From Setoptus koraiensis (Eukaryota > Animalia > Arthropoda), in NCBI GenBank assembly GCA_048013815.1, contig CM106586.1:806001-870000 (forward strand): a stretch of DNA of 64,000 nt, written 5' to 3'. Shown here piece by piece: positions 381 to 63,488 of this stretch. The notes beneath the pieces are model-generated. The model worked only from the letters and a program-made list of their open reading frames with translations. It was not told where the DNA came from and ran no database searches. The translations under genes and the position numbers were made by a program. Every line of letters starts with the position of its first letter. Positions within the stretch are counted from its first letter, which is position 1.

Positions 381-1338
381 GGGTGTAGTCCCGAAGAGCG
401 CCACACTTCTATTGAGATGAAACTTCACACATGGGGCCCGTAGGGCCCCCTCAGTACAAATTGAGCGGTCCGGAAGTGCGGAAACTCCCGGTTCCGGTTT
501 TAATATAACTTCGAGATACAGACTCAAAACTCGGTACACTGGTAGATTCAAGCATGCTGAGCACAACGCCATCAATTTCAGCCATGTTGGACGCGCGGTT
601 TTTGAGATTTTTGGGAAAAACCAAGAGAAAGTTGTTAAAAGTTGGGGTTGCCCTGATAAGGGCCGTTTTTGTTGGTTTTCACCTCTTGCTTGCTATTCTA
701 TGCGCATGATCTTAGCGAGTTCAGCGAACGGGTCTTTGTTCGATGGAATGCCGTCATTGGACGACCTGCCAGAAGCTATACTTGCGCAATCGGTCGGAAT
801 TACGCTGATTGATGAACTGTTAAATCTGAAGCCTGCGCATTCGATGGGATGCTGTGAAATCTTGGGCTTCACAGTTCGCAGTCTGATTATCTCTTTTGAC
901 AGGGTATGGATTGCAGTCACGTGAGCGGAGGGTAGAGGGCGCAGCCCGATACCCGAAGCGCTCATCAACTCTACCCGAAGGGTTCCCGTCGCACGGAGTC
1001 GTCGCGAGAGCGACGACGGAGATGTGACTGCCTCCAGATTACGAGGCCGCAGGCCGAGTTCTTGGACCCATCACAATCAGAGCGAAGCTAAGGTCTGTTT
1101 CTACTATTCCTTGCTGTATTGGACGCGACTTCATCGATGTACCAAAAATTACCCCGAAAAAATACCCGCAAATCCCCAAGCGGCTGTCGGGTATCGAGAA
1201 ACGCCCATATAGCGTTACCTCGGTTATCTCGGGAACCAAGAATTTCCGCGAATCCATCGCGGTATCAGGGTACAATACCCTACCCAAAAATACCCAAAAT
1301 ACCCCGAAAAAAGTGTGGCGCTCTTCGGGACTATAACC
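381..1338 (+). mobile_element. Complete MITE family A copy (958 bp) with conserved core at ~906-1060
   Basis: TIRs GGGTGTAGTCCCGAAGAGCGCCACAC / GTGTGGCGCTCTTCGGGACTATAACC; perfect 8-bp TSD AAACATTC (373-380, 1339-1346). Confidence 0.92.
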
Positions 1339-1544
1339 AAACATTCTTCCCCTCTCAATATTTATGAGAGCGATTGTACATAGATATGGCTTGTTTTGCC
1401 GGCGATTCTTTTATTATACAGAACCTGTTTGTTCAATCCTCTGTTTCTTGCGATGCAGTCCATGGATAATTCTCTACAAGTAGAACAACTTCATGTTTTA
1501 TCTTCCGCTCTGCAAGAGTTTTTGCCGGCGATTCATAATTCTTG

Positions 1545-1887
1545 GTAAACAAATTTTGAACAGCTAGAATGTGATGATGAGGTGGCAGACTTAAAATTCG
1601 ATCATATCTGTAGCTCACTGTGTATTAGGGAGCGGAGCTACTTAAGTCTCAATCAAGCTGCAGCTTACAGTGTGCTAGGGAGTAGGAGCGACCTAAGTCT
1701 CAACTAGAGTGTGGCTTACTGTGTGCTGAGGAGGTGGAGTGACTTAAGTCTCATTCAGGCTGTAGCTTTCTGTGTGCTAAAGAGGGGGCGTGACTCGAAA
1801 TTGTAGGCTTGTGTGTGGATTGCCTCCTCCATTTAGAATCCAACATCACTACGTCATTAGCGCTTAATTAAAATTAAGCGCTAAAAA
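1545..1887 (-). mobile_element. 5' part of a Helentron-type non-autonomous element (HINE) with ~60-bp internal tandem repeats
   Basis: Palindromic terminus AGCGCTTAATT-AA-AATTAAGCGCT followed by AAAAA (1859-1887); interior is the reverse complement of the copy at 42954-43806. Confidence 0.8.
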
Positions 1888-2333
1888 TCTGTATCTTCTG
1901 CGATGAGATATGCATGTTGTCCACCAATGATGAATTTGACAAATCTGTCAATGATCAAATCATCACTGAATAAAAATCTTGTGTTGGCGATATCCTTCAT
2001 CAAGCCATGAGAACGTTTATAATGCCTCTTCAGCGTTACATGACTTGTTGATTTTGCATATTCCTGAATACAATCCGGGAACATACATCCCTTTTTATTG
2101 CCAACTGTCATGTATCTAGTTTTAACCCAAATTGAACTAACTGGTTCAGCTGACTCACCTAGATCTGCTGAGCTCTGGGTTTCAACAGTATCTACATCCA
2201 TAACTTCTTGCTGAGTCTGCACTGGAGAATTCTCTGATGAGCTTACTGGATTATCCGTGGCGTCCATGGTAGTGACTGATGAATGTGTTGATATGGTGAT
2301 TGGCATAAAAATATCTCCTTGGTAAATATTCAT
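1888..2333 (-). pseudogene. N-terminal fragment of a hAT-like transposase (BED zinc finger), truncated by a HINE
   Basis: SSIWVKTRY..KGCMFPDCIQEYAKSTSHVTLKRHYKRSH fits the BED finger pattern (W..C-x-C..T..L.RH..H); followed by a hAT-like helical segment (DLIIDRFVKFII). Confidence 0.7.
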
Positions 2334-2420
2334 ATCTCCACTAATATGATGACTAATATAATGAATAATATATCGAATGGTCGGTAATAGATGTCTGAAA
2401 CTTAATCTAAATAAATTTTT

Positions 2421-2939
2421 GGTTGTTGTAGCGAAAAGCGACCCGCCCCGATTTCGATGAAACTTCCGGTACGGGTACATCTTGACCTCAGTAGACCTGA
2501 AAAGTTAGTCCGGAAGTGCGGAAACTTCTAGTTCCGGTTTTACATGAAGCTAAGGATAGAGCTCCAAAATTCACCAGAGGGACGTTCCAGGCTACGCCAA
2601 ACACGATAAAATAATATTCAGCTCTCTACGACCTCCGGTTGTCTAGAAATATAGATATTACAAGGGTTTCAAGACCGGAAGTGACCAAATTATCGCTTCG
2701 CTGTGCTCGAGGATGAACATGCGGTGGGTCTGAAAACTCGGCCTGCGGCCTCGTATTCTGGAGGCCATCACATCTCCGTCGTCGCTCACGCGACGACTGC
2801 GTGCGACGGGAACCCTTCGGGTAGAGTTGATGAGCGCTTCGGGTATCGGGCTTCGCCCTCTACCCTCCGCTCGGGTGACTGCAATCCACACAGGAATGAA
2901 GGTGAAAGAATGAACTGGGGACATGTATTTGGCACAGAA
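2421..2939 (-). mobile_element. MITE family A copy (left arm plus core ~2737-2885), truncated by a HINE 3' end
   Basis: TIR GGTTGTTGTAGCGAAAAGCGACCC; near-identical to 41206-41720. Confidence 0.85.
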
Positions 2940-12586: not shown

Positions 12587-13458
12587 GGGTGTTGTAGCGA
12601 ATAGTGCCACACTCAGATTTCCACCAAACTTCACACATTGGGCCCGTAGGGCCCCCAAACAACGGATTCGCTAGTCCGGAAGTGCGGAAACTTCCGGTTC
12701 CGGTTTTACACAAAATTCAAGCTAGAGCAATGAAACTTGATATGCAGCAAGATATAGACATTCTGAGTACAATGGAGTTTGTTTTACGTGTGTGCCGCTT
12801 CCGGTTCTGGAGAGATTCAGGAAAAACCGCGCGGGTATCCCGCTCGGAACGAGGCATACGCGCGCACGAGTAAATACGTGCGCCCTTGAGGCTCCGATAA
12901 GTCGCCACACAAGATGGCAAAGCGCTAGATCTGTGCTTAAATCATGTTCCGAGGCTTTCAACATTTCTTCTTGTCTCTTACTCTCGTCTATGGTTTGCAG
13001 TCATGTGAGCGGAGGGCTGAGGGCGAAGCCCGAAACCCGAAGCGCTCATCAACCCTACCCGAAGGGTTCCCGTCGCACGCAGTCGTCGCGGGAGCGACGA
13101 CGGAGATGTGGCGGCCTCCAGATTACGAGGCCGCAGGCCGAGTTCTCAGACCCATCGCAGGTTCATCCCCGAGTGCAGCGAAGCTGAAATTCGTCAACTT
13201 CCGGTCTTCCAAACCAATAAATATGCCGATATCTCAAGAACCGGAAGTTCCACTGAGCTGAAAATTGTGCCATCGTGTTGAGCGTTCTTCGGAACGTCAC
13301 TATGGTGATTTTCAGACCTCTAGCTTTCTTTTGAGGTAAAACCGGAACCGGAAGTTTCCGCACTTCCGGACCACTTTTTTCGTTCTATTGAGGTCAAGAT
13401 AAACCTATACCAGGAGTTTCATCAGAATCTGAGTGTGGCACTATTCGCTACAACAACC
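12587..13458 (+). mobile_element. Complete MITE family A copy (872 bp), core ~12990-13145
   Basis: TIRs GGGTGTTGTAGCGAATAGTGCCACACTCAGATT / AATCTGAGTGTGGCACTATTCGCTACAACAACC; TSD GAAGAAAC. Confidence 0.93.
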
Positions 13459-21204: not shown

Positions 21205-21795
21205 TTCGTTCTATTGAGGTCAAGATGAACCTATATCGGAAGTTTCATCAGAATCTGGGAGTGGCACTATTCGCTAGAACAACCAAAGTATCTAAATAAT
21301 ACACATGTTAGCTCTGCGTGCGACGGGAACCCTTCGGGTAGGGTTGATGAGCGCTTCGGGTATCGGGCTAAGCCCTCCACCCTCCGCTCACATGACTGCA
21401 ATCCATGCATAAATGAAGGGGGGAATATAAAATTAAGGATGAGACAGGTAGGAACAACTGAATTACTAGCTGATTCATGGTGTTGCGCAGTCTGTGCACA
21501 GTATGGGCCCGCTTACCGCAACCGCACAGGCCCGGCCGCACCTCTAATTTCAGTTGAACCTTGATATCTAGCAAACCGGAGGTGATACCGGATTGATTTT
21601 GATTTCATCCTGCTCCGCTTAGGGTCATCTACCTGATTCTCAATTTCCAGAGCTCTAGCTTCAACTTTATGTATAACCGGAACCATAAGTTTCCGCACTT
21701 CAGGACCACCTAATCCATGATGTGAGGCCCCAGCAGGGCCCGTGTGTCAAGTTTCATGATGATCGGCGCTGGGACCTAATCGCAAAAACACCCCA
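21205..21795 (-). mobile_element. Rearranged MITE family A fragments including partial core (~21315-21410)
   Basis: Both terminus types present; arm matches 33800-34185. Confidence 0.7.
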
Positions 21796-26757: not shown

Positions 26758-28330
26758 TTATACCTCTGTAAGCGTAACTTGACTATTTGGATGTACTTGA
26801 TACCTCATTTGTTCTAGATCATAATAAGCAGTGATCCTTTGATCATTTAACTTCTGTAATTCATAGTAACATCCTAGAACAGTCAATACACATATACCCA
26901 CTATTATCCAAATTAATAGAATTAGAATTGCATTTTCGTTGTTCTCTATGATTAATCTATCTGTTGTATGAGCCATTAAAAGTTATAATTTACCTTTCTG
27001 GATCAGCTGTTATATCTATGATAGATGTATCCTTAGTTTCGATCTCATTTAATTCCTTAAAATTCAATAGTTCTGCTACTTCCGGTATTGCTATTCGTCC
27101 TAATTTGCATTCTTTAACTAAGTAACTAAGTTTTTAAGATCTATGACTTAGAATATGTATAGCTTGGCAAACATTTCGGGTATTCTATACAAGAGCGCCA
27201 CACTCCGATTCCAATGAAACTCAACACAGGGGGCCCGCAGGGCCCGACAACAATAAATTCGAAGGTCCGTAAGTGCGGAAACTTCCGGTTTCAAGAAAAA
27301 TCAAAGATAAAGCTTGAAACTCAGTATACAGCCTGCTCAGAGCATGTCAAAAAGAAAAGTGTCAATTTCAGATCTGAACGACTTCCGGTTCTTATAATAC
27401 TGCCGTTACTCTTTTGGAAGAGGCATTTTCACATGTGTTTGGGGGGAGTTGACAGGGAACATTCTGATCTTCCACTTTTATTCGGGTATGGATTGCAGTC
27501 ATGTGAGCGGAGGGTAGAGGGCGTAGCCCGATACCCGGAGCGCTCATCAACCCTACCCGTAGGGTTCCCGCAGTCGTCGCGGGAGCGACGACGGAGATGT
27601 GACGGCCTCCAAAATACGAGGCTGCAGGCCGAGTTTTCGGATCAAACGCAGACTCATCGCCCAGCGATGCAAAGCTCAAATCTGCAAAAGTAAGCTTGTC
27701 TGCAGAGGCCCGATCTCTTTTGGTCACCGTAAATGTTTGTTTCCTACGCCCTGGCACGGACCACTTTTGCTTGATCTCGGGGTCACTATCTTCACCAAAT
27801 AAAGTACCCATACTGGGTCACAATGAGTTGCTCCACCCTGGAACACCCATGCTACCCCAAAAAAATGCCCCGAAAAATGCTCGCGGTCGTCGGGTATTGA
27901 AAAACGCCCACTAAGCGGTACCTCGGTTATCTCGGGAACGAGGAATTTCCGCACTTCCGGAATACTCAATCCGGTTTCAGGGTACAATACCCCAGCCGAA
28001 AATACCCAAAAATCCCCGAAAAGAGTGTGGCGCTCTTGTATAGAATAACCAACATTTCTTCTTTAGCTTCTTGAGGTAAAAGGTCCTCTTTCTTTATGCT
28101 TTTACTCATACTTATCAGATCAACCCACATTAGCTCTTTATATATTCATAAAAGACATCTCCTGTATCGTGTCTTAGATGATCTCCCCAATCTTTCATTT
28201 GCTTCTCAAAGTCTGTGACTTCTGCAAAAGCGAACTTTGATCTTAACAAATTAGTTACTATTATACCAGTTATATTTGCTCCTGTGTTATAATGGATACT
28301 ATCTCTTTTCCATCTCTTTTGGGGTTGACA
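26758..28330 (-). pseudogene. env-like glycoprotein pseudogene interrupted by a MITE
   Basis: Furin-like KKRWKR site, N-glycan sequon NIT, C-terminal TM (LILLIWIIVGICVLTVLGCYY); homologous along its length to 50890-51823. Confidence 0.65.
27178..28050 (+). mobile_element. Complete MITE family A copy (873 bp), core ~27487-27635
   Basis: TIRs GGGTATTCTATACAAGAGCGCCACACT / AGTGTGGCGCTCTTGTATAGAATAACC; TSD AACATTTC. Confidence 0.93.
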
Positions 28331-34710: not shown

Positions 34711-35985
34711 TCGGGTAGGGTATTGTGCTCTGAGACTCCGCTCACATGACTGCAATCCAAACACAGCTGAAGGCGGGAAGAGTGAGCGAACCACCCAACA
34801 GAGAATGAGAAAGAATGGATTAAATGACTGAAACAGACGTGAATACAGAGTGCAGCGAGCACGAGGCACAGAATGGGTCCGCTGACCGCGACCGCACAGG
34901 CCCGGCCTCACCCCTAAATTTGGTTTAACCTCTGTATCTTATGGACCGGAAGTTAAAGCGGATTAGTTTTGATCTCATCATGCTCCGCTAGGTGGCAACA
35001 ATCTGATTCCGAAGTTTCGAAGCTCTATCTCAATATTTTAGCATATCCGGAACCGGAAGTTTCCGCACTTCCGGACTACTCAATTCATAGTACAGGGCCC
35101 CTGCGGGGCTCGTGTGTCAAGTTTCATGATGATCGGCGCTGGGACCTAATCGCAACAACACCCGGAAATTCTTCGTTCCCGAGTTACCCGAGGTACCGCA
35201 TTGTGGGTATTTTAGGGTATTTGGAGGCATATTGACGATACAATCGATCGTACCCACCCAAACGGACATCGGTTAGGGTACCAACATCTTTATACCGAAG
35301 GTAGATTGCACCTAGAAGCTCTAGAAGTCGAGTAAAAGCAGTCGAACTGAAGAGGCGTGACCGATGCGCGCGGCGCGGAGTGAAACTGCACCCGCAGTTA
35401 GTCAGACTCCACACCGAGTCCTAGCGCGTGCACTATTACTTTTTGCTACCAGTTGCGCGTGCTTATTCATGTGTGGACCAGATTCACGTACAGCACACGA
35501 TCAGGGATATTTCCCCCAACTTTTGGGATTTGACCACCGGAAATGAGTACCACAGTCGAGCAGGTTGGGCGCGGGCCGGAGGAGGGGTTCGGCCTCCAGT
35601 CGTCCACGCCTACGGCCTGCGGCCTCCGGCGGGACGACTGACGGCCACCTAACTAAAAAAGATTCTTCCCGAAGAATGGGAGTCGAGTGGGCGGGGCCCG
35701 TGATCGGGCCGGGTTTCTTTCATATATGGTGTGAACCCGCTTTAAAGACCGTAACTAGGTGGTAGTACAGCCGAATCGCGTCAGTTTGCAAACCGGAAGT
35801 GTGACTTGCACTTATTGTCAAATCGCCAACGAGTTGATGTAAGAGATTTATCTCAACGCTATCACATAGATAGCATCTGGATCTAGACAATCATACAAAA
35901 ATCTAAGGTCTGGGGCCCCTCAGAGGCCCAAAAAATGCATATCTCCGGAAGTAGAAATTTCCGCACTTCCGGACCACTATATTTG
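34711..35985. mobile_element. Partial family A copy (to 35164) inserted in a family B copy (35165-35985)
   Basis: 35165-35985 is near-identical to 28815-29630; family A terminus at 35164. Confidence 0.8.
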
Positions 35986-36846
35986 GGTTGTTCTAGCGAA
36001 TAGTGCCACACCCAGATTCTGATGACACTTCCGGTATAGGTTCATCTTGACCTCAATAGAACGAAAAAAGTGGTCCGGAAGTGCGGAAACTTCTGGTTCC
36101 GGTTTTACCTCAAGTTAGAGCTAGAGGTCTAAAACTCACCATAATAGCGTTCCAAAAGACGCTAAACACGTTGGCATAATTATTAGCTGGGTGTGACTTC
36201 CGGTTCTCGAAATATCGGCATATTTATTGGTTCAGAAGACCGAACCAATGACGAATTTCAGCTTCGCTGCACTCGGGGATGTACCTGCGATGGGTCTGAG
36301 AACTCGGCCTGCGGCCTCGTAATTTGGAGGCCGTCACATCTCCGTCGTCGCTCCCGCGACGACTGCGTGCGACGAGAACCCTTCGGGTAGGGTTGATGAG
36401 CGCTTCGGGTATCGGGCTACGCCCTCTACCCTCCGCTCACGTGACTGCAATCCATGGAAAATTCTTGGTTGAAGAAATGCGACGATAGAAACTGAATTCA
36501 TCACAATGATGCGTATCATCAAGAATCGGAGAGATACCGGGATGAATTGGCGCACGTATGTTCTCGTGCGCGCGGATGCTTCGTTCCGAGGTGAATACCC
36601 ACGCGGTTTTTCCTGAATATCTCTTGAACCGGAAGCCGCACACAGATGAAACGAACTCCGTTGTACTCAGCACGTCCGCATCCTGCTGCTCATCAAGTTT
36701 CATGGCTCTAGCTTGAAGTTTGTGTAAAACCGGAACCGGAAGTTTCCGCACTCCCGGACTAGCGAATCCGTTGTTTGGGGGCCTTTCGGGGCCCATGTGT
36801 GAAGTTTGGTTGAAATCTGAGTGTGGCACTATTCGCTAGAACACCC
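35986..36846 (-). mobile_element. MITE family A copy (861 bp), core ~36300-36455, no matching TSD
   Basis: Both TIRs present; similar to the reverse of 12587-13458. Confidence 0.87.
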
Positions 36847-37554: not shown

Positions 37555-38348
37555 GGTTATTCTATCTAACACGTACCACGCCCAACTTGGGTATTTTGGA
37601 TATTTTTGGGTAGAGTATGATGCCCTGGTACCAGAAAAGGTATTCCGGAAGTGCGGATATTCTTCGTTCCCGAGATACCCGAGGTACCGCATTGTGGGTA
37701 TTTCAGGGTATTTGTGGGCATATTTGGGGTACGGGCAGCCGTACTCTCCCGCATTCACATACGGTGTGGTACTGATGGTCGACCTAACAGCCCCAGAAGG
37801 AAAATAAAAGTAGTTCAACCTAAAGGGTGTGACCAATGGATGCGGCACGGAGCGCAAATGCGCCGACGGCAAAATGATTGACGGCCTGCCTCGTGACGGC
37901 CCTACCGGCCGTCTCGCATCCCGGGAAAGGATTATTTCCCGTAGGCTGGGGGTCGAGTGGGCGGGGCCCGCCATCGGACCGGGTTTTATTCAACCCCGCT
38001 TTGAAGTAGCAAGCTCTAACAGACGATTATGCCAAACAGGCTACCCGAATCGCGTTGAATCTCGGACCGGAAGTGCTAGATGTAGAAAATAGTGAATTTC
38101 TCAAGATCGGGATCTCAAATATAATTCAATCTAATGAAATCACGTAGATCGTGGTGGAAGCTGTGCGATCATACCAAAATATATGGTAGAAAGCATCTGT
38201 GAGACCGAAAGAATGGATTTTTCGAAATCTCCGGAAGTGAAAATTTCCGCACCTCCGGACTGTCATATTCGTCTTTGAGGGCCTCTTCGGGGCCAATGTG
38301 TGAACTTTCGTGGGAATCGGGTTTGGGTACGTGTTAGATAGAACACCC
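37555..38348 (+). mobile_element. MITE family B variant
   Basis: TIRs GGTTATTCTATCTAACACGTACC / GGTACGTGTTAGATAGAACACCC; core-2 hairpins at 37860-37990. Confidence 0.82.
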
Positions 38349-44934: not shown

Positions 44935-46800
44935 TTTTAGCGCTTAATTTCAATTAAGTTGCTGTTCGTGTGGTGATGATGGATACGTTTATTCACGTGA
45001 GTAGAACAAATCAGTGCAATTTTCGGGTGTTCTTTCGAATAGCGCCTCACTTTGATTTGGATGAAACTTCACACACAGAACCCGTAGGACCCCTTGACAA
45101 TGCTCTGAGTAGTCCGGAAGTGCGGAAACTTCCGGTTCCGGTTTTAGCTTCATCTTCGAGATACAGTCCAGAAACTCGGTATGTTACTAAATCAGACTAC
45201 GATAACCCCGATGACATCATTGAAAACAATCTCTACAACTTCCGGTTCTCGAGATATTCAGGTAAATTGCATGTATGGGCGAATCTAGGCCGGTCTGGGT
45301 CTAATCAGAGCCAAAATCTTACACCCAGAGCAGGGTGACACGCATTCATGAACAAAACCCGGCTCGATCACGGGCCCCGCCCACTTGACTCCCAGTCCTC
45401 GGGAAGAATCTTTTTTAGTTAGTTGGCCGTCAGTCGTCCCGCCGGAGGCCGCAGGCCGTAGGCGTGGACGACTGGAGGCCGAACCCATTCTCCGGTTCGG
45501 GCCCAAGCTGCATGTCAGACGGAAGGGCTCTTATATATTGAACATGGGTGAGCATGGGCACCCCGGGTATCCCGTGCTACCTGCGACGGTCATGCCGCAC
45601 TCATCCGGTTGTGATTATCACCCTTGCGTAGCCTAATACACACTCGGATACCCGAAATACCCGGGTACAACCTGGTATCGCTCCTCGGGTTCATTTTCAC
45701 ACATCTGGTATACAATTTCTGAGTTCAGAAAGCTTGACTGTACCTTGCTGTCGCAAAATTATCTTCAAAAAAAGCAGTGGGAACCACTAGCGGTCGTCGG
45801 ATATCTCAGAACGCCCACTGTGCGGTACCTCGATTATCTCGGGAACGGAGAATTTCCGCACTTCCGGAGTATCCATCGTGATATCGGAGTACAATGCCCT
45901 ACCCTAAAATACCCAAAATACGCCGATAAAAGTGTGGCGCTATTCGAAAGAACAACCCGATTTTCTATCTAGGGAAAATTAGCACAAGGAAGGCATCGGG
46001 AAGCATCTGGTGGGTTTCATCGTTCTAAATTTACCTAGTTTGTTAGTACAGTGGAAGCTAGGAGGCGGAGTCATTGGAAAACAATTATACAGTGGAAGCT
46101 GAGGTGCTTACTAGACAAAATTAGAAGCAAGAATGCTAGCTGTTTACAAATTGGAATTAGCACTAGGGAAGCTAGAAAGGCGAAAACTGGGTAGATTTAG
46201 TACAATAGAACGCTTAAATGTTGGTTTATTAAATTTAAGACAGGAACAGCTAGGAGGCGGAATCACTAGGAAACAATGAAACAGAGAAGACTGAGATGCA
46301 AACTAGGTGGATCTAGCAAAGTAGAAGGCTAGCTGTTGACAATTAGGATCTAGCGCACGGGAAGTTAGTAGTCATGAAACTAGGAAATCACAGTACAGTA
46401 GAAGCTACTCAAGTTGACAAGTGTCTCGCAGCACAATTTATCCTGTGATTGGTCGAACTAGGTGAAAGTGACGAACTTGGAGCTGGGATGCCCACTAGAA
46501 TGATTTAGCAGAGCAGAGGGCTACTGATTAATTAAGATCAAGTGCACGAGGATCGAGTAACAGCTAGCTTACATTATTGGGTCGTAATCAGCACTGTGAA
46601 AGGCACATAACTCAGTCATGCAGCACAGTCAAAGGCACGCAAAAATTTGAACAGCGTCATAGCTGAGAATTGAACAGTTCTCAGCTATGACAAACACAAT
46701 TAATATTGTCAAAGGCACTATAACTGTGCTGTACTGTGTGGAAACTGAAGATGCACATGCTCTCAGCTATGACATGCACAATTAGCACAGTCAAAGGCTA
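44935..46800 (+). mobile_element. HINE 5' part with degenerate AGCAC/GAAGCT repeats and a nested MITE
   Basis: TTTTTAGCGCTTAATTTCAATTAAG terminus; body resembles 19200-19700. Confidence 0.65.
45025..45957 (+). mobile_element. MITE family B variant (933 bp)
   Basis: TIRs GGGTGTTCTTTCGAATAGCGCC / GGCGCTATTCGAAAGAACAACC; TSD CAATTTTC/CGATTTTC (7/8). Confidence 0.88.
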
Positions 46801-47159: not shown

Positions 47160-47925
47160 TCATGCGTATGGTAACTTGTTGGTCAGAGTCAAATTGCCAT
47201 TTAGCTCTTTTAACTTGTTGACTTGTTCTGCTAAATATTTTTGATTCGCAATTAAGAGTATCTCATTTTCGGCAGTTGTGTCTATTTCATTGTAATGCAT
47301 GTTATCAACCACCACGTCTCTTCTTGTGATGTTTAACATCACTGTAATAGCCTCTACTTCTATATCACCTGTTTTAAAGCTGACGTCGACGGGTAATTTA
47401 AACACGGATGACGGGCAGAACTGACTGTGGTTGTGAATTGTTATGTTGCCAGGGTAGCAGTAAACATAGTTATATAGTTTGGTAACTACTACCCTCGGCT
47501 CTATGTCTGTTAGGCTAACGTTTGTTAACGTAATCCAGCGGTTAAGGGAAGGATCAATATGATCTTTTACGGTGCATCTTTCTGATATGATGTTAGCTCT
47601 CTCGTCTACGACTGCTTTCCTGCAGTTATGTACTCTATCGTAGAGTACATAGTTCTTACCGACATATCTTTTGAACTAGTATATATATCCCAGTGGTCGA
47701 ATGCTACTATCTGGTAAATTCTTGCGTGTGGATACTCAATAATTAGTGCGAAGTGGAGATGCAGACCGTTACCATTGCTGACTAAGGACGCTGAGATGAA
47801 CTCGGTAAACTCTGGGTTATAATTAACGAGGTCAATATCTAGATTTTCGACACGGAGATGATGTGTTGCATTCACATTCATGAAGTGGGCAACATCACGT
47901 GTCGCTACTTTACCTTGCTGAGCTT
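47160..47925 (-). pseudogene. Second env-like glycoprotein fragment (frameshifted), unrelated to the other env copies
   Basis: Beta-rich ectodomain-like sequence with Cys and sequons (NAT, NVS, NIT, NLT; YVYCYPGNITIHNHSQFCPSSVFKLP) and a C-terminal heptad-like helix. Confidence 0.5.
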
Positions 47926-48435
47926 GGTTGTTCTAGCGATTAAGTCCCCAACCGGATCTTGATGAAACTTCAGGTATAGGTCTATTTTGACCTAACTAAG
48001 ACGGAAAAAGTGGTCCGAAAGCCAGGAAACTTCCGGTTCCGGTTTTACATAAAGTTGAAGCTAGAGCTCTAAAATTCACCAGAGAGAGATTTTAAGCTAC
48101 GCTCAACACGTTGACATAATTTACAGCTCCGTGCGACTTCCGGTTCGCCAGATATAGGGATAATACAGGGGTCAGAAAACCGGAAGTGACCAAATTATTG
48201 CTCCGCTGCGCTCGGGGATGAACATGCGGGAGGTCTGAGAACTCGGCCTGGGGCCTCGTAATCTGGAGGCCGTCACATCTCCGTCGTCGCTCCCGCGACG
48301 ACTGCGTGCGACGGGAACCCTTCGGGTAGGGTTGATGAGCGCTTCGGATATCGGGCTGCGCCCTCTACCCTCCGCTCACATGACTGCAATCCAAACACAG
48401 CAGGCGGGAAGAGTGAACGAACCAACCAACAGAGA
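47926..48435 (-). mobile_element. MITE family A copy (left arm plus core ~48240-48395), truncated by a HINE
   Basis: GGTTGTTCTAGCGATTAAGTCCC terminus. Confidence 0.85.
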
Positions 48436-49497
48436 ACAAGTAATACTGATCAAATCAGTATTTAGAGCGCTTAATTTTTCATGTAGACGATTATCGTTGA
48501 TAATTAGGAGGAGTTTATGAAGACCTATTAGCGCTCGCAATCGATGAATTGATGCATACTTGGTAGCCAAGAGTACGAGAGATCTCAGCTATACCACTAT
48601 GTGCTCGTGTGCGGTATGCTATCCAAATTAATCGTTTGGTCGTTTCATACCATCTAAAGAGTATAACAAACTAGATCCAGGTTTCTCAAATTCTCACCAT
48701 AGTTAGATGTACATGTCTGCTGCCTGCATGCAAAAATTGGTGCACTTCTATCGGTTAGTTTTGCCACAATTAATGATTTCAATACATACACCAAGAAGCA
48801 ATGGCGTACTATGTGTTGAAGCGCGCGCTTCATGTGCGGTGTGCTATTCAAATTGATCGTTTGGTCGTTTCATACCATCTAAAGAGTATCACAAACTAGA
48901 TCCAGGTTTCTCAAATTCTCACCATAGTTAGATGTACATGTCTGCTGCCTGCATGCAAAAATTGGTGCACTTCTATCGGTTAGTTTTGCCACAATTGATG
49001 ATTTCAATACATACACCAGGACGCAAAGGCGCACTATGTGAATTCATCTAGTTAGCATCGCAGCATTGAGCGTGTTACTCTCGTCTAGTTTCATCTACAT
49101 CAGAATCAACAGTGCTGAGAAGCAGTAGTCATTCTGAGTAGCTTCTACTGTTATACAATCTTCTAGTTCTAACGCCTCTAGCTTCCAGTGCACTGAATCC
49201 GAATTGTATACAGCTAGCCTTTTGCTGTGCTAAATTCATCTAGTTAGCATCTCAGCATTGAGCGTGCTAATCGCGTCTAGTAGGTGGACGCGCATAGCAT
49301 TCTATGTGCTAAATTCAATTAATCAACATTGTAAGCTTTGAGTGTTCTAAATTTATCTAGTTTATTTCTCACAGTACAGCTTTCACCGTGCTATTTTTTC
49401 CTAGTTGAAAAAAGCACTGATTTGTTCTACCCACGTGAATAAACGTAGAGCCCAGAACCATCCCAATAGCTGCTTAATTAAAATTAAGCGCTAAAAA
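48436..49497 (-). mobile_element. Full-length HINE with an internal ~225-bp tandem duplication
   Basis: 3' ACAAGTAATACTGATCAAATCAGTATT plus AGCGCTTAATT; 5' TTAATTAAAATTAAGCGCTAAAAA; duplication 48625-49040. Confidence 0.85.
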
Positions 49498-50017: not shown

Positions 50018-50888
50018 GGGTGTTGTAGCGATTAGTGCCCCAGTCAGATTTCAATGAAACTTCACACACGAAGCCTGCAGGATCCACAAATGATAACCTT
50101 GGTGGTCCGGGAGTGTGGAAACTTCCGGTTCCGGTTTTACTTAAAAATTGAGATACGGACTTGAAAATCTCTATAATTATCGATCTAAAGATGCATAGGA
50201 AGATACAGCTAATTTTAAGACTGAAAAACTTCCGATTCACGAGACATTGGGTGGGAACCCCTGCAAGGCGGTGACGGGACTGAATATCGACCTATATGTG
50301 CGCTAGAAGAACCCGTACTGTCCACCACAAAATTCCGCGCCTCTTCCGTTCCTCGAGATTCTCACACTTGGATGTCCAGGTTCACGGTGAACAGTCCGTT
50401 CCTCTACTTACGGTCGTGTATGGATTGCAGTCATGTGAGCGAAGGGTAGAGGGCGCAGCCCGATACCCGAAGCGCTCATCAACCCTACCCGAAGGGTTCC
50501 CGTCGCACGCAGTCGTCGCGGGAGCGACGACGGAGATGTGACGGCCTCCAGATTACGAGGCCCCAGGCCGAGTTCCCAGACCCATCGCCTACTCATTTCT
50601 GAGCAAATCGAAGCTCTAATTGCCACTTCCGGTCTTCTGACGTCAAATAAATCGCTACATCTGGAAAACCGGAAGTCGAACAGAGCTAAAGATTATGCCA
50701 TCGTGTTCATCGTTGTCAGTAACGTCTCTCTGGTAATTTTCAGGCCTCTAGCTCAAACTTCATATAACACCGGAACCGGAAGTTTCCGCACTCCCGGACC
50801 AACTTTTCCAGTCTATTTGGGTCAAGATGTACCCGTACCGGAAGTTTCATCAATATCGGGGCGGGGCACTAATCGCTACAACAACCAA
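50018..50888 (+). mobile_element. MITE family A copy, core ~50420-50575
   Basis: TIRs GGGTGTTGTAGCGATTAGTGCCCC / GGGGCACTAATCGCTACAACAACC; no matching TSD. Confidence 0.87.
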
Positions 50889-58619: not shown

Positions 58620-59644
58620 TGTTCCATCGAACAGTGACCCACTCCGATTTTCTTCAAACTCAACACAGGGGCCCTGGAGGGGCCCCGAAGTACAAATAAA
58701 GTGGTCCGGAAGTGCAGAAATTCTTACTTACGGAGATATGGAAAAATGGGGTGCTGTTCGGAAAGACGACACACTCCGATTTCGATCAAACTCAACACAG
58801 GGGCCCCCAAGTACAAATATGACAGTCCGGAAGTGCGGAAATTTTTACTTCCGGAGATATCGAGAAATCCATTTTTTTTGTCTCACAGATGCTTTTTACC
58901 ATATATTTTGGTATAATCGCACAGTTTCCACTACGATGTACGTGATTTCATTAGATTAGATCATATTTGAGAACTTGATCTCGAGAAATTCACTGTTTCT
59001 TATCTAGTACTTCCGGTCCGAGATTCAATGTGAATAGAGTAATCTGTTTGGCGTAATTGACCATTCAGGCTTACAACTTGAACGCAAGGCCGAACAGAAC
59101 CCGGCCCGATCGCGGGCCCCGCCCACTCGACTCTCAGCCCACGGGAAACAATTCTTTCCCGGGATGCGGGACGGCCCGTAGGGCCGTCACGAGGCAGGCC
59201 GTCAATCGTTCCGCCGTCGGCCGAAGGCCGAGGGCGTGGACGGTAAGCCGGCCTATGCGGGTGGGCCAAAGGCCCACCCGCACATCGTGGCACCTCCTGA
59301 GGGGCGCAGCCCCGAAGTGCGTGCTCAGAATCCCCTCGATGATACGAAGAGCCTTCCTAAGTTAAATCACTTTTATTCTGCTCCTGTGGCTGCTAGGGAG
59401 AATCTACTTTCGGTGAATGACCATCAGCACCACACCGGATGTGAATGCGGGATGGCACCGCCGCCCGTACCCCAAATATGCCGAAAAATACCTTAAAATA
59501 CCCACAAGGCGGTACCTCGGGTATCTCGGGAACGAAGAATTTCCGCACTTCCGGAATACCCTTTCTTGTCTCAGGGCATCATACCCTACCCAAAAATACC
59601 CAAAATACCCAAATCGGGCTGGGTACGTGTCCCATACAATAACC
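58620..59644 (-). mobile_element. MITE arm fragment (58620-58748) plus family B variant (58749-59644)
   Basis: Termini GGGTGTTCCATCG, GGGTGCTGTTCGG and GTGTCCCATACAATAACC; core-2 hairpins at 59090-59290. Confidence 0.8.
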
Positions 59645-59891
59645 CAGTTTTGCTATGGCATATTAGAACTTCAGTAGCTCCATTAGGGAGCGGGTTTACA
59701 ATTTTAGACAATAAATATTTTAATTTATCTTCGGTACTAACTAATTTTATATCTGTTTTTATTCTTATCTTACTTCCATTTATTAATCTATCCTTTAGCC
59801 CCCAGCAAAAGAGTTTAGAGGCACATATGCGGATTCGAGCCTTCCTATTTATCGCTACCCTGAAGGACGGAGCAGACCAAGGCCTACTACC

Positions 59892-60654: not shown

Positions 60655-60738
60655 GGGTGTTGTTCGGAACACGTACCAAGCCAGATTTCCTCCAAACTTC
60701 ACACATGAGCCTCAAAGAGGCCATAAAGAACAAATAAA

Positions 60739-61610
60739 GGTTGTTGTAGCGATTAGGTCCCAGCGCCGATCATGATGAAACTTCCGGTACAGGTTCATCT
60801 TGACCCAAAACCATCGGGAAAAGTGGTCCGGAAGTGCGGAAACTTCCGGTTCCGGTTTTACCTAAAGTTGCTTCTAGAGAGTTGAAACTCACCAGACTGA
60901 CGTATTAGATGACGATCAACACGATGACATAGCTTTCAGCACTTCACCACTTCCGGTTCTCTGGTTATAGCGATATCTCTAGAATTGAGAGACCAGAAGT
61001 TGCCGAATTCTGGCTTCGCTACACTCAGGGATGAGCCTGCAATTGTTCTTAGAACTCGGCCTGCGGCCTCGTATTCTTGAGCCCGTCACATCTCCGTCGT
61101 CGCTACCGCGACGACTGCGTGCGACGTAAACCCTTCGGGTAGGGTTGATGAGCGCTTCGGGTTTCGGGCTGCGCCCTCTACCCTCCGCTCACGTGACCGC
61201 AATCCACACACAGCTGCAGGCGGGAAGAGTGAACGAACCACCCAACAGAGAATGAGGAAGAAGGGATTAAATGACTGAAACATACGTGAATACAGAGGGC
61301 AGCGAGTACGAGGCACAGGATAGGTCCGCTGACCGCAACCGCACAGGCCCGGCCTCACCCCAAAATTTGGTTTAACCTCTATATCCTATGAACCGGAAAT
61401 TAAATCGGATTGATTTTGATCCCTTCATGCTCCGCTAGGTGTCCACCATCTGATTCTGAAGTTTCGAAGCTCTATCTCAAAATTTTTGCATCTCCGGAAC
61501 CGGAAGTTTCCGCACTTCCGGACTACTCAATTCATAATAAAGAGCCCCTGTGGGGTCTGTATGTCAAGTTTCATGATGATCGGCGCTGGGACCTAATCGC
61601 AACAACACCC
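60739..61610 (-). mobile_element. Complete MITE family A copy (872 bp), core ~61052-61205
   Basis: TIRs plus TSD CAAATAAA. Confidence 0.93.
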
Positions 61611-61708
61611 CAAATAAAGTGGTCCGGGAGTGCGGAAATTTCTACTTCCGGAGATATGGAAAAATGCATTTTTCGGGCCTCTGAGGGGCCTCAGACCTTA
61701 GATTTTTG

Positions 61709-63488
61709 GTGTATTGTATGGAACAGCGCCACACTTTGATTTTGATGAAACTTCATACCTGAGGCCCGCAGGGCCTCCTGACAACAGTTTGAGTGGTCCG
61801 GAAGTGCGGAAACTTCCGGTTCCGGTTTTACAAAAACTTCGAGATAGAGCTTCGGAACGCAGTATGCAGCATGATTCGAGCATGCTGAACACAATGGAGA
61901 CAAATTAAATTGCGTGCAACTTCCGGTTCTTGAGATATTCTCAGTTCAAGATATATTTCCATGGTAAATAGTCTGTTCATCCACCTTTAATCGTGTATGG
62001 ATTGCAGTCATGTGAGCGAAGGGTAGAGGGCGCAGCCCGATACCCGAAGCGCTCATCAACCCTACCCGAAGGGTTTCCGTCGCACGCAGTCGTCGCGGGA
62101 GCGACGACGGAGATGTGACGGCCTCCAGAATACGAGGCCGTAGGCCGAGTTCTGGGTGTAGTCCCGAAGAGCGCCACACTTCTACTGAGATGAAACTTCA
62201 CACATGGGCCCCGTAGGGCCCTCTTATTACAAATTGAGTGGTCCGGAAGTGCGGAAACTTCCGGTTCCGGTTTTAATAAAACTTTGAGATACAGACTCAA
62301 AACTCGGTATACTGGTAGATTCAAGCATGCTGAGCACAATGCCGTGAATTTCAGCCATGATGGACGCGCGGTTCTTGAGATTTTTGGGAAAAACCACGAG
62401 AAAGCTATAAAAAGTTGGGGTTGGCCCTGATAAGGGCCGTTTTTGTGGGTTTTCACCTCTCGCTCTTATTCTATGCGCATGATCTTGACGAGTTCTGCGA
62501 ACGGGTCGATGGAATGCCGTCATCAGACGACCTGCCAGAAGCTATACTTGCGCAATCGGTCGGAATTACGCTGATTGATGAACTGTTAAATCTGAAGCCT
62601 GCGCATTCGATGGGATGCTGTGAAATCTTGGGCTTCACAGTTCGCAGTCTGATCATCTCTTTTGACAGGGTATGGATTGCAGTCACGTGAGCGGAGGGTA
62701 GAGGGCGCAGCCCGATACCCGAAGCGCTCATCAATCCTACCCGAAGGGTTCCCGTCGCACGCAGTCGTCGCGGGAGCGACGACGGAGATGTGACGGCCTC
62801 CAGATTACGAGGCCGCAGGCCGAGTTCTTGGACCCATCACAATCAGAGCGAAGCTAAGTCCTATATCTACTATTCCTTGCTGTATTGGACGCGACTTCAT
62901 CGAGAAACCAGAAATTACCCCGAAGAAATACCCGCAAATCCCCAAGCGGCTGTCGGGTAACGAGAAACGCCCATAGAGCGGTACCTCGGTTATCTCGGGA
63001 ACCAGGAATTTCCGCACTTCCGGAATACCTATCGCGGTATCAGGGTACAATAGCCTACCCTAAAATACCCAAGATACCCCGAAAAAAGTGTGGCGCTCTT
63101 CGGGACTTTAACCCGAGTTCTCAGACCCAGCTTCCAGCCTGATCGGTTGCGATTTCATATTCATTCGATCAGGATATCATGACAGCGCAGACACGAACCT
63201 TTTTTTGCTGGATTTATGAGTCACTTTTAGGAAATCTAAAAGTACCCAGATCGGTTCAAAATGAATTTGTCTACCCAAAAATACCCAAAATACCCCGAAA
63301 AAATGCCTTAGAAACCGCTAGCGGTCGTCGGGTATCGAGAAACGCCTTCCATGCGGTACCTCGGTTATCTCGGGAACTAGGAATTTCCGCACTTCCGGAA
63401 TACCTATTCCGGTATGAAGGTATTATACCCTACCCAAAAATACCCAAAATATCCCGAAAAAAGTGTGGCGCTGTTCCATACAATAACC
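61709..63488 (+). mobile_element. MITE family A copy (core ~61997-62150) containing a further copy
   Basis: TIRs ..TATTGTATGGAACAGCGCCACAC; TSD GATTTTTG. Confidence 0.9.
62154..63113 (+). mobile_element. Complete MITE family A copy (960 bp), same subfamily as 381-1338
   Basis: TIRs GGGTGTAGTCCCGAAGAGCGCC; TSD CGAGTTCT. Confidence 0.93.

What the first reader, a model, noticed from the sequence alone, without database searches (positions are those of the whole stretch)
906..62828. Near-invariant ~150-bp core in ~15 MITE copies folds into C-GNA-G triloop hairpins, a signature of folded single-stranded DNA
Seen: copies at ~906, 2737, 12990, 21315, 27487, 30324, 30905, 33645, 36300, 41520, 48240, 50420, 61052, 61997 and 62672 are almost identical in the core while the arms are only distantly related. 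On the GGATTGCAG strand the core forms: TGAGCG-GA-[GGGTA-GA-GGGC-GNA-GCCC-GA-TACCC]-GAAG-CGCTCA with tandem G.A pairs; ACCC-GNA-GGGT; GTCGTCGC-NNNN-GCGACGAC; GGCCTC-loop-GAGGCC; and GGCC-GNA-GGCC. A closing helix GTCAYGT/ATGTGAC tolerates the observed C/T polymorphism as a G.T wobble. Substitutions concentrate in loops, and the triloop middle base varies (GCA/GTA/GAA) while G and A are usually kept (exceptions: TTA at ~21365, CCA at ~50560). Established: d(C-GNA-G) mini-hairpins and sheared tandem G.A pairs are exceptionally stable in DNA; structured RNAs more typically use GNRA/UNCG tetraloops. Inference: the core is a functional folded ssDNA or RNA element, such as a single-strand replication/priming origin, a nuclease or recombinase recognition site, or an ncRNA. 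That is unexpected in the middle of a TIR/8-bp-TSD cut-and-paste element.
Basis: partly seen in the sequence, partly recalled or inferred. Interest (0 to 1): 0.88.

Follow-up and report, generated by a model that had tools for sequence, protein, structure and literature searches.

The report
Hyper-conserved hairpin core inside MITEs
A 155-base, hairpin-rich module sits in the middle of at least four families of small cut-and-paste transposons and is far better conserved than the transposon ends themselves, so the elements appear to need it as a folded single strand, although what it does is still unknown.

Summary
The window carries 15 copies of a ~155-nt core that are 91-97% identical. The sequence around them is 23-90% identical. 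Seven elements have perfect 8-bp target-site duplications. The copies belong to four MITE families whose terminal inverted repeats differ, so the core is better conserved than the transposase-recognised ends.

The GGATTGCAG strand folds into a cloverleaf plus one extra hairpin, closed by C-GNA-G triloops and one C-GNGA-G tetraloop, with invariant tandem G.A pairs. This strand is the more stable one in 12 of 12 copies. Variants shared by two or more copies avoid stems (12 of 14 unpaired, p=0.0003), while private changes are random. That fits selection in the transposing lineage followed by neutral decay.

Classical covariation is absent: one compensatory pair. There is no Rfam, tRNA or coding signal, and no copy turned up outside the window.

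A second, different hairpin-cluster core sits at the same central place in sister families. One copy of it carries a flip-flop inversion of its hairpin.

Best reading: a cis-acting folded-strand module of the transposon. Whether it acts as ssDNA or RNA is unresolved, with a slight lean to DNA. The nearest described phenomenon is the highly conserved domains of SINEs. Identity with a known one could not be tested.

The parts
907..1062 (+). Type I core copy c907, inside the F2 element 381-1338 (TSD AAACATTC)
   Evidence: 193 bits
2733..2888 (-). Type I core copy c2888, inside a 5'-truncated F1b element 2421-2944
12587..13458 (+). Complete F1a MITE (872 bp, TSD GAAGAAAC) with core at 12991-13146. 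Carries the only compensatory stem change (A-T to T-A, alignment columns 31/47)
21314..21405 (-). Type I core copy c21405, broken after column 95. Its first triloop reads TTA. The left arm runs to 21795
27181..28050 (+). Complete F3 MITE (TIR GGGTATTCTATACAAGAGCGCCACAC, TSD AACATTTC). Core at 27489-27637 with a 7-nt deletion
29936..30733 (+). F1 mosaic element with core at 30325-30480. Its left arm resembles c33797 and its right arm resembles c41673
30890..31034 (-). Type I core copy c31034 (F2 type) with a deletion of about 21 nt that removes the last hairpin
33330..34185 (-). Complete F1d MITE with core at 33642-33797. Its core carries the majority allele at all 13 recurrently variable columns compared by hand
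35986..36846 (-). Complete F1a MITE with core at 36299-36454
   Evidence: 197.5 bits
41206..42065 (-). Complete F1b MITE (TSD GACGAAAC) with core at 41518-41673. This copy was used for the single-sequence folds
47924..48436 (-). 5'-truncated F1 element with core at 48238-48393. The loop of its last hairpin reads CCA
50018..50886 (+). Complete F1c MITE with core at 50421-50576. The loop of its last hairpin reads CCA
60739..61610 (-). Complete F1d MITE (TSD TTTATTTG) with core at 61051-61206. It is the most decayed core copy
61708..63488 (+). F4 MITE (TIR GGTGTATTGTATGGAACAGCGCCACAC, TSD GATTTTTG) with core at 61998-62153. It is interrupted directly 3' of the core by the F2 element
62154..63114 (+). 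F2 MITE nested in the F4 element (TSD CGAGTTCT, which is core columns 152-159 of the host copy). Its own core is at 62673-62828
34736..35164 (-). F1d-like left arm plus only the first 26 nt of the core (truncated copy)
45026..45957 (+). Sister MITE with the same arm architecture but a different central module, the type II core (about 45340-45510). Its main hairpin is CAGTCGTCC / GGCC-GCA-GGCC / GGACGACTG
29190..29375 (-). Type II core copy in 'flop' orientation: the inner 26 nt of the hairpin are reverse-complemented relative to the other copies
35555..35735 (-). Type II core copy in 'flip' orientation
59085..59345 (+). Type II core variant with four triloop hairpins (DNA fold z=-5.9). Its outer stem shows one G-C to A-T compensatory change plus two wobble changes relative to 45026
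37800..37995 (-). Fifth type II core copy. It keeps the upstream block that includes the invariant stretch CGGGCCCCGCCCACT, and it is truncated in the hairpin part

Best explanation
The core is a cis-acting functional module of a superfamily of non-autonomous TIR transposons with 8-bp target-site duplications. Selection among transposing lineages has kept it nearly unchanged while arms and even TIR tips diverged. After insertion, each copy decays neutrally.

What is selected is a fold of one strand, the strand that reads from left arm to right arm. An interrupted 11-bp closing helix encloses three hairpins. A fourth hairpin follows. Loops are of the C-GNA-G and C-GNNA-G type, and two tandem G.A platforms are invariant.

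Inferred, not shown: the fold is recognised by a protein when the element is locally single-stranded. That protein would be the transposase or a host factor that also binds the TACCC and CCGGAAGT repeats of the arms. Recognition would raise that copy's chance of being mobilised or copied.

I lean slightly to DNA rather than RNA as the active form, for three reasons:
- Only a cis-acting feature can be kept by selection in a non-autonomous DNA transposon.
- The loop class is the one that is exceptionally stable in DNA.
- The sister core shows a DNA-level hairpin flip.
For: - The core is the best-conserved segment in all 28 pairs of elements compared (0.86-0.96 against 0.37-0.90 for the TIR tips).
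- The most variable sites inside the core (columns 39, 136, 17, 104) have a pairwise difference of 0.48-0.59, as high as or higher than the arms. The core is therefore old and constrained, not young.
- Shared polymorphisms avoid stems (2 of 14 paired against 88 of 145 columns paired, p=0.0003). Columns with only private changes are random with respect to stems (12 of 17 paired, p=0.79).
- 98.7-99% of the alignment cells (one copy at one base pair) form a standard pair. Ten one-sided changes all give G.U on this strand, and one change is compensatory.
- The sense strand is more stable than the antisense strand in 12 of 12 copies, as RNA and as DNA.
- C-GNA-G hairpins number 63 against 5.9 expected, 39 sense and 1 antisense in the cores.
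- The stems have unrelated sequences but the same loop type.
- The sharp 5' edge of conservation coincides with the first base of the closing helix.
- A different core (type II) at the same central position in sister families is also a cluster of triloop hairpins.
- The hairpin flip-flop with palindrome 'perfection' and the loss of one whole hairpin (c31034) show that intrastrand pairing happens in the DNA.
- TACCC is enriched in arms (10-12 per element in F2 and F3, 6 in the sister element, against 1 per kb) and occurs 3 times in the core.
- Mini-hairpin DNA is far more stable than the RNA equivalent, and such hairpins serve as protein recognition sites at ssDNA origins and at phage N4 promoters (PMC13037366).
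Against: - There is no significant covariation, and stem sequences are almost invariant. Sequence-level recognition or homogenisation could explain as much as structure does.
- Only 15 copies from one 64-kb window were available.
- The structure was derived from the same sequences that were used to test it.
- No ssDNA stage is known for eukaryotic TIR/TSD transposons.
- The GNGA tetraloop, the conserved G.U pairs and the wobble tolerance are at least as typical of RNA.
- No autonomous partner or transposase was found in the window.
- Half of the shared polymorphisms are incongruent with arm families, which points to recombination or gene conversion between cores.
Confidence: 0.45

Rival explanations
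1. The core is a structured RNA domain. The MITE is transcribed from about 30 nt upstream of the core, where there is a CAGTY-like initiator and a pyrimidine tract. The folded RNA acts either on the nascent transcript in cis or as a small non-coding RNA.
For: - RNA fold z-scores are -2.9 to -6.3 on the sense strand.
- The tetraloop varies as GAGA/GUGA/GGGA, the GNRA pattern.
- G.U pairs are conserved and the one-sided stem changes are G.U-compatible.
- There is an excess of C>T over G>A on the sense strand in the core and the right arm but not in the left arm (24 against 10, p=0.01). This pattern is expected for the non-template strand of a rightward transcript.
- A semi-conserved CAGTYYGTTC plus CT-rich tract lies before the core.
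Against: - No Rfam family matches, even at E<=10.
- Three C-GNA-G triloops within the ~155-nt core, plus one just 3' of it and one in the left arm, are unusual for a functional RNA, and they are much less stable as RNA (PMC13037366).
- A trans-acting RNA cannot keep each master copy intact in a DNA transposon.
- No conserved terminator or poly(A) signal was seen.
- No expression data exist.
Confidence: 0.25
2. The core has no function. It is kept uniform by ectopic gene conversion and recombination. Hairpin-forming DNA breaks often, and the core has far more homologous donors than any arm. The core would then be a recombination hotspot that also shuffles arms, as has been proposed for the conserved domains of SINEs.
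For: - The arms are mosaic, with crossovers at the core. c30325's left arm is 88% identical to c33797 but its right arm only 72%. c33797 and c61206 are 92% identical in the right arm and 76% in the left.
- About half of the shared core variants are incongruent with arm families. c62673 lacks the two variants shared by the other F2 copies.
- Even the closest pairs have less diverged cores than arms.
- The recombination-hotspot hypothesis for SINE conserved domains is set out in PMC5804259.
Against: - Conversion is blind to structure, so it does not explain why persistent variants sit in loops.
- It does not explain why the tandem G.A mismatches are invariant instead of being 'corrected' to perfect complementarity.
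- It does not explain why the conserved block starts exactly at the closing helix in all families.
- Several core sites are as diverged as the arms.
Confidence: 0.15
3. The core acts as double-stranded DNA. It would be a cluster of binding sites: an internal transposase-binding enhancer, or a promoter-like module that keeps chromatin open. The hairpins would be a by-product of palindromic sites.
For: - The CACGTG E-box at columns 15-20 is intact in 5 of 15 copies.
- Three TACCC sites in the core match the repeat that is enriched in arms.
- CCGGAAGT (ETS-like) repeats occur 3-6 times per element in most elements (1-3 in F2), against 0.07 per kb.
- The type II core has an invariant GC-box-like block, CGGGCCCCGCCCACT.
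- Cis action on DNA is the natural mode for a DNA transposon.
Against: - Five palindromes with unrelated half-sites share only their loop type, and only on one strand (39 against 1).
- The G.A/G.A mismatches break palindromic symmetry yet are invariant.
- Stem transitions favour the wobble-compatible side 9-10 to 3 (p about 0.05-0.07).
- The E-box is mutated to CATGTG in 8 of 15 copies.
Confidence: 0.12
4. The core is a piece of a known repeat or RNA gene, for example a SINE highly conserved domain. It would have been acquired once by an ancestral MITE, as the V domain was acquired by human MER6, and then carried along.
For: - MER6 is a precedent for a SINE domain inside a MITE (PMC6887750).
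- Arthropods carry the Nin, Inv and Pln domains, and the Inv domain forms hairpins (PMC5804259).
Against: - There is no tRNA, 5S or 7SL head and no A-rich or LINE-like tail next to the core.
- Capture alone does not explain continued conservation while arms diverge.
- No match was found in any searchable collection.
Confidence: 0.06

Closest known systems
Highly conserved domains (HCDs) of SINE superfamilies (CORE, V, Deu, Nin, Inv, Ceph, Pln, Meta); the V domain inside the human MITE MER6
   Same: A central domain is shared almost unchanged by otherwise divergent non-autonomous elements. The reason for the conservation is unknown. Modules are exchanged around the domain. One such domain (Inv) forms hairpins, and one (V) sits in a MITE (PMC5804259, PMC6887750).
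   Different: Here the carriers are TIR/TSD DNA transposons, not Pol III retroposons, so RNA-level explanations do not carry over. The core is conserved across several MITE families rather than being a single captured SINE. It has an explicit strand-specific mini-hairpin architecture. Sequence identity with any known HCD could not be tested.
Folded single-stranded DNA sites of bacteria and phages (integron attC, IS200/IS605 and REP hairpins, plasmid sso/ssi and phage G4 complementary-strand origins, phage N4 hairpin promoters)
   Same: These are orientation-specific clusters of imperfect hairpins recognised as structure. GNA/GNNA mini-hairpins closed by C-G occur at several of these sites (PMC13037366, PMC6393395, PMC3333891).
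   Different: Those systems have a known ssDNA stage and a dedicated HUH enzyme, tyrosine recombinase, primase or polymerase. None is known or seen here. This element is eukaryotic and has TIRs and 8-bp TSDs.
hAT-like and other MITEs with 8-bp TSDs
   Same: TIRs, 8-bp TSD, a size of about 0.8-1 kb, no coding capacity, subterminal short repeats, high local copy number and nested insertions.
   Different: In ordinary MITEs the termini are the conserved part and the interior drifts. Here the interior core is the most conserved part. The TIR tips (GGGTGT...) do not fit the usual hAT terminal motif.
Quasi-palindrome template-switch mutations and flip-flop hairpins of parvovirus or poxvirus termini
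   Same: The inner part of the type II hairpin is found in both orientations between inverted repeats, with 'perfection' of a flanking mismatch.
   Different: The hairpin is internal to a chromosomal transposon, not a replicating terminal hairpin. Only one flop copy was seen.

Membership tests
MITE (non-autonomous TIR DNA transposon) | Terminal inverted repeats | tested here: met
   Left and right termini are inverted copies over about 26-35 nt in all four families
MITE (non-autonomous TIR DNA transposon) | Target-site duplication of fixed length | tested here: met
   Perfect 8-bp TSDs in 7 elements, including a nested insertion
MITE (non-autonomous TIR DNA transposon) | Small size, no coding capacity, many copies | tested here: met
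   Elements are 810-963 bp. All three sense frames of the core have stops. Variable sites show no third-codon-position bias in either strand (counted by hand). The window holds 15 core-bearing copies plus arm-only relatives
hAT superfamily | 8-bp TSD | tested here: met
hAT superfamily | Terminal motif of hAT type and a cognate hAT transposase | tested here: inconclusive
   The tips read GGGTGT..., not the usual YARNG (from my own knowledge). The only candidate is an ORF with a BED-like zinc finger at 1881-2480. It has no Pfam support and lies outside a MITE
SINE highly conserved domain | Central domain shared by divergent non-autonomous families | tested here: met
   (as an analogy only)
SINE highly conserved domain | Carrier has a Pol III head (tRNA/5S/7SL) and a LINE-related or A-rich tail | tested here: not met
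   No tRNA, no Rfam hit. The carriers have TIRs and TSDs
SINE highly conserved domain | Sequence match to a described HCD consensus | not testable with these tools
   No Repbase, SINEBase or Dfam. Supplements of the HCD papers are not held
Known RNA family or ribozyme (Rfam 15) | Covariance-model match | tested here: not met
   0 hits at gathering score over 64 kb. Only chance-level hits at E<=10 on a 301-nt stretch
DNA mini-hairpin motif (GC-GNA-GC / GC-GNNA-GC) | G...A loop closed by a C-G pair | tested here: met
   Three triloops and one tetraloop in the core, one more directly 3' of it and one in the left arm. 63 such hairpins in the window against 5.9 expected
DNA mini-hairpin motif (GC-GNA-GC / GC-GNNA-GC) | Forms as ssDNA in vivo with a sheared G.A pair | not testable with these tools
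   Needs chemical or enzymatic probing or NMR
Folded-ssDNA recombination or priming sites (attC, IS200/IS605, sso/ssi) | Strand-specific imperfect hairpins | tested here: met
Folded-ssDNA recombination or priming sites (attC, IS200/IS605, sso/ssi) | Partner enzyme (HUH nuclease, tyrosine recombinase, primase) and an ssDNA life stage | tested here: inconclusive
   No such gene was recognised among the window's ORFs. Absence from a 64-kb window proves little

The most novel reading that the evidence does not exclude
A eukaryotic superfamily of TIR transposons with 8-bp TSDs depends on a central folded-ssDNA module. The module would be a cluster of C-GNA-G mini-hairpins, read on one strand as a loading, synapsis or priming site. 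This would imply a single-stranded or replication-coupled step in the movement of an element that otherwise looks like an ordinary cut-and-paste transposon. It would be a eukaryotic counterpart of attC, IS608 or sso-type folded DNA.
Probability: 0.17. Interest if true: 0.85.

Novelty: new variant of a known kind. Interest (0 to 1): 0.62.

Why it matters
In MITEs the ends are expected to be conserved and the interior to drift. Here the interior is the most conserved part, across families whose ends have diverged, and it has an explicit strand-specific fold.

If the core is needed in cis, it identifies a requirement for DNA transposition beyond transposase-end recognition. It also offers a tractable model for an open question: why non-autonomous elements keep 'highly conserved domains'. 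That question has stood for SINEs for some 25 years.

If the active form is ssDNA, it would extend folded-DNA recognition from bacteria and phages to eukaryotic transposons.

If the cause turns out to be concerted evolution driven by hairpin fragility, it would be a clean example of structure-dependent gene conversion shaping repeat families.

Tried and rejected
- Rfam at gathering score on the whole window and at E<=10 on one copy gave nothing meaningful. ARAGORN found no tRNA.
- Hammerhead, K-turn, C/D box and Pol III A/B box readings were checked by eye and do not fit.
- Coding was rejected. All three sense frames have stops. The open antisense frame has no homologue among 5.8 billion clustered proteins or 1.84 billion representative proteins. 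Variable sites show no codon periodicity.
- Exact-pattern scans for two core segments and one arm motif found nothing. Core segment 1 was scanned against viral, metagenome and prokaryote-genome contigs, core segment 2 against metagenome contigs, and the arm motif against viral contigs.
- Loci from related organisms, reached through a host gene and a gypsy element, hold no copy.
- A covariance model of the core finds only the 15 known copies strongly. Its weak hits led to the type II core.
- The arms show no conserved RNA-like structure; the covariation term is positive.
- No autonomous partner is in the window.
- CpG decay as the cause of the C/T polymorphism was rejected as a general force. 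CpG observed/expected is about 0.9-1.2 everywhere, and other core CpGs are intact.
- A recent discrete insertion of the core was rejected. Flanks on both sides remain homologous with graded identity, no empty-site copy exists, and the most variable core sites are saturated.
- Literature searches for the sequence or for a similar MITE core found nothing.

Full report
SETTING

The window looks like an animal genome, probably a chelicerate or another small arthropod.
- It holds a Ty3/gypsy pol ORF at 5317-7959, whose named relatives are from ticks, spiders, a pseudoscorpion, a mite and rotifers. One unnamed relative, 91% identical, sits on a Logan contig.
- It holds a Q-rich exon of an Ig/transmembrane protein. 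Its 50-70% relatives lie on compact eukaryotic contigs from metagenomes.
- CpG observed/expected is about 1.
- The three 500-N gaps touch none of the elements discussed.

blastn with the first copy finds 15 copies at 89-97% identity over about 155-170 nt. A 25-mer from the first hairpin occurs 14 times, against 0 expected. The copies and their defects are listed under 'parts'.

Extending the comparison shows that each core sits near the middle of an element of about 810-960 bp.
- The elements have terminal inverted repeats.
- Seven elements have perfect 8-bp target-site duplications. One of these seven is an element nested in another, directly after the host's core.

In fact four families carry the core, and their TIRs differ:
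- F1: GGGTGTTGTAGCGAATAGTGCCACAC
- F2: GGGTGTAGTCCCGAAGAGCGCCACAC
- F3: GGGTATTCTATACAAGAGCGCCACAC
- F4: GGTGTATTGTATGGAACAGCGCCACAC
F1 further splits into subfamilies.

In all 28 pairwise comparisons the core is the most similar segment:
- core: 0.86-0.96
- terminal 30 nt: 0.37-0.90
- 120-nt arms: 0.63-0.91 (one right-arm pair 0.23)
- 60 nt before the core: 0.23-0.68

Within the closest pairs the core is still 2.6-fold less diverged than the arms (12/408 against 117/1547, p=0.0005).

THE FOLD

Single copies fold well, with z = -4.4 as RNA and -3.9 as DNA. RNAalifold on the 15-copy alignment A1 gives a cloverleaf:
- A closing helix pairs columns 4-17 with 121-133 (TGGATTGCAGTCAY with GTGACGGCCTCCA).
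- Hairpin 1 is TGAGCG / GGGTA / GGGC-GNA-GCCC / TACCC / CGCTCA. It has an invariant tandem G.A and a 2x4 internal loop.
- Hairpin 2 is AACCCT...AGGGTT, or alternatively ACCC-GAA-GGGT.
- Hairpin 3 is GTCGTCGC-GNGA-GCGACGAC.
- A fourth hairpin lies outside the cloverleaf: AC-GA-GGCC-GNA-GGCC-GA-GT. It repeats the design of the tip of hairpin 1.

The closing helix starts exactly where conservation starts. It competes with an alternative extension of hairpin 3 (columns 83-91 with 118-127), which the single-sequence fold prefers. The data do not decide between the two.

A GC-GAA-GC mini-hairpin follows about 40 nt downstream of the core. A GGGCCC-GNA-GGGCCC hairpin sits in the left arm and shows some compensatory change.

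Hairpins of the form C-GNA-G with at least 4 bp number 63 in the window, against 5.9 +/- 2.4 after shuffling. In the cores, 39 are on the sense strand and 1 on the antisense strand. The sense strand is the more stable strand in 12 of 12 copies, with either parameter set.

IS THE FOLD CONSTRAINED?

Classical covariation is absent. There is one compensatory pair (A-T to T-A in c12991), and 45-59 of 500 shuffles do as well. There is simply too little variation in stems.

The distribution of variation is informative.
- Of the 145 core columns, 88 are paired.
- Fourteen columns vary in two or more copies. Twelve of those are unpaired (p=0.0003).
- Seventeen columns carry only private changes. Twelve of those are paired, which does not differ from invariant columns (p=0.79).
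- The most variable sites are the middle bases of the loops and a few junction bases. Their pairwise difference is 0.48-0.59, as high as or higher than the arms.

So the core is as old as the arms, its unconstrained sites are saturated, and the rest has been held. Changes made after insertion fall at random. This is the signature of selection among transposing lineages, not selection on each genomic copy. With 15 copies in 64 kb, a host function for every copy is implausible anyway.

Transitions in stems fall on the wobble-compatible side 9-10 times against 3 (p=0.05-0.07). Because these are mostly private changes, the bias may be mutational. Private C>T exceeds G>A on the sense strand, 7 to 1 in the core and 17 to 9 in the right arm, but not in the left arm.

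WHAT IT IS NOT

- It matches no Rfam family and is not a tRNA.
- It is not coding. The sense frames are closed. The antisense frame has no homologue. Variable sites show no codon periodicity.
- No copy was found in viral, metagenomic or prokaryotic contigs, or in the loci fetched from related organisms.
- The arms are not structured RNA.
- It is not a recent discrete insertion. The flanks on both sides remain homologous at graded identity across families, and no empty-site copy is present.

A SECOND CORE

Weak GC-rich hits of a covariance model built from the core led to five copies of a different central module. They lie in sister elements with the same arm architecture: 45026-45957, about 28780-29700, about 35160-35985, 59085-59345 and 37800-37995.

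This type II core is again the segment shared among elements whose flanks do not align. It consists of two parts:
- a block that includes the invariant stretch CGGGCCCCGCCCACT;
- a hairpin cluster that again uses GGCC-GCA-GGCC and other triloops.

Pieces of it (CAGTCGTC, GAGGCCGCAGGCCG) recur in the type I core in a different arrangement.

One copy carries the inner 26 nt of the main hairpin as an exact reverse complement (25 of 26), between 9-nt inverted repeats. The flanking G.A-type mismatch is converted to a perfect pair. This is what intrastrand template switching at a quasi-palindrome produces (my own knowledge). It shows that these sequences pair within one DNA strand in vivo.

The 59085 variant has one G-C to A-T swap and two wobble changes in the outer stem.

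Nearly all GC-rich islands of the window are cores of one type or the other.

MOTIFS SHARED WITH THE ARMS

TACCC occurs three times in the type I core. It occurs 10-12 times per element in the arms of F2 and F3 and 6 times in the sister element, against 1 per kb elsewhere. CCGGAAGT occurs 3-6 times per element in most elements (1-3 in F2), against 0.07 per kb. These look like subterminal protein-binding repeats. Their presence in the core suggests that the same protein touches the core. That is an inference.

MECHANISM

Shown:
- conservation beyond that of the TIRs;
- a strand-specific fold;
- stem-sparing of lineage-level variation;
- neutral decay of inserted copies;
- an analogous hairpin module in sister families;
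- DNA-level hairpin events.

Inferred: the module acts in cis on the element's own propagation. In a non-autonomous DNA transposon only a cis-acting feature can be kept by selection, since a trans-acting product would be a public good. That reasoning favours DNA. So do the loop class, which is exceptionally stable as DNA and much less stable as RNA, and the use of such hairpins as protein recognition sites at ssDNA origins and phage N4 promoters (PMC13037366).

Against DNA: no single-stranded stage is known for eukaryotic TIR/TSD transposons, and the GNRA-like tetraloop and G.U pairs are ordinary RNA features.

I therefore commit to 'cis-acting folded-strand module of the transposon' at 0.45. 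Within that I split roughly 55:45 for DNA over RNA acting on the nascent transcript. A free-standing RNA role is listed separately as a rival.

RIVALS

- Gene conversion or a recombination hotspot without function has real support. The arms are mosaic with crossovers at the core, and about half of the shared variants are incongruent with arm families. It does not explain the stem-sparing, the invariant G.A mismatches or the structural edge of the conserved block.
- A double-stranded binding-site cluster explains cis action. It does not explain the one-strand loop bias.
- Capture of a SINE domain, as in MER6 (PMC6887750), could not be tested for lack of repeat libraries.

COMPARISON WITH WHAT IS KNOWN

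The nearest described phenomenon is the highly conserved domains of SINE superfamilies. Their conservation is called a major enigma, and recombination-hotspot and host-function hypotheses are on the table (PMC5804259).

This case differs in three ways:
- its carrier is a set of TIR DNA transposons;
- it is shared by several MITE families with divergent ends;
- it has an explicit mini-hairpin fold.

In how it may work, it most resembles bacterial folded-DNA sites (attC, IS200/IS605 and REP hairpins, sso/ssi). It fails their membership test, because no partner enzyme or ssDNA stage is in evidence.

VERDICT

Function is unproven. Novelty is a new variant of a known kind: a MITE with a conserved central domain. 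Interest is 0.62.

Noticed in passing
window 45026-45957, 28780-29700, 35160-35985, 37800-37995, 59085-59345: Sister MITE families carry a second, different GC-rich hairpin-cluster core (type II) at the same central position. It is again the only segment shared between otherwise unalignable elements.
   Followed up: partly
window 29215-29295 compared with 35575-35655 and 45425-45482: Flip-flop: the inner 26 nt of the type II hairpin are the exact reverse complement (25 of 26) in one copy, between the 9-nt inverted repeats CAGTCGTCC/GGACGACTG. A flanking mismatch is converted to a perfect pair, which looks like intrastrand template switching.
   Followed up: yes
window 62144-62160 and 63107-63125: An F2 element inserted into an F4 element directly at the 3' edge of the host's core. 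Its TSD, CGAGTTCT, consists of core columns 152-159.
   Followed up: yes
MITE arms, e.g. window 12676-12710, 13340-13380, 62990-63030: CCGGAAGT (ETS-like) repeats occur 3-6 times per element in most elements (1-3 in F2) against 0.07 per kb background. TACCC repeats occur 10-12 times per element in F2 and F3 and 6 times in the sister element. They are probably subterminal protein-binding repeats. TACCC also occurs 3 times in the core.
   Followed up: partly
type I cores and F1 right arms (alignments A1, A2): Private substitutions show C>T in excess of G>A on the sense strand (core 7:1, right arm 17:9, left arm 6:10). This is a possible transcription- or replication-linked mutational asymmetry that starts at the core.
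   Followed up: partly
left arm, about 350 nt upstream of the core (e.g. window 12640-12660, 27232-27246, 61762-61778): A GGGCCC-GNA-GGGCCC hairpin whose sequence differs between subfamilies but stays complementary: C-G to G-C in 2 copies and to G-U in 1 at one pair, and U-G wobbles at another.
   Followed up: partly
window 4104-7959 (-) and 52592-53908 (+): Ty3/gypsy retroelement parts. A pol ORF of 880 aa is followed by a RING/TRAF-like extra ORF. A separate gag-protease ORF runs towards the gap at 54284. A 91% identical pol is on a Logan contig of run SRR33593474.
   Followed up: partly
window 1881-2480 (-): An ORF with a BED-like C2H2 zinc finger and a hAT-like downstream motif lies just outside the right end of the c2888 element. 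It has no Pfam support. It may be a remnant of a hAT-type transposase.
   Followed up: partly
window 17617-18171 (+): An ORF with a helix-turn-helix N-terminus that resembles a Tc1/mariner-type transposase fragment.
   Followed up: no
window 23589-24646, 40460-41136, 20004-20529, 10289-10495, 3130-3198: A TTCGAA-rich satellite-like repeat (units of about 21, 95 and 191 bp) recurs next to several MITE copies.
   Followed up: no
window 55909-57690 (+): A single-exon ORF of 593 aa with the end of an Ig-like domain, one transmembrane helix and a long Q/N-rich tail. Relatives at 50-70% identity lie on compact eukaryotic contigs from metagenomes (L002-L004), next to Tollip-like, PQ-loop and RB genes. 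Those loci hold no MITE copy.
   Followed up: partly
whole window: CpG observed/expected is 0.89-1.21 in background, arms and cores, so there is no sign of germline CpG methylation. Apart from four short stretches that were not followed up, all GC-rich islands (at least 58% GC over 120 nt) are MITE cores.
   Followed up: yes
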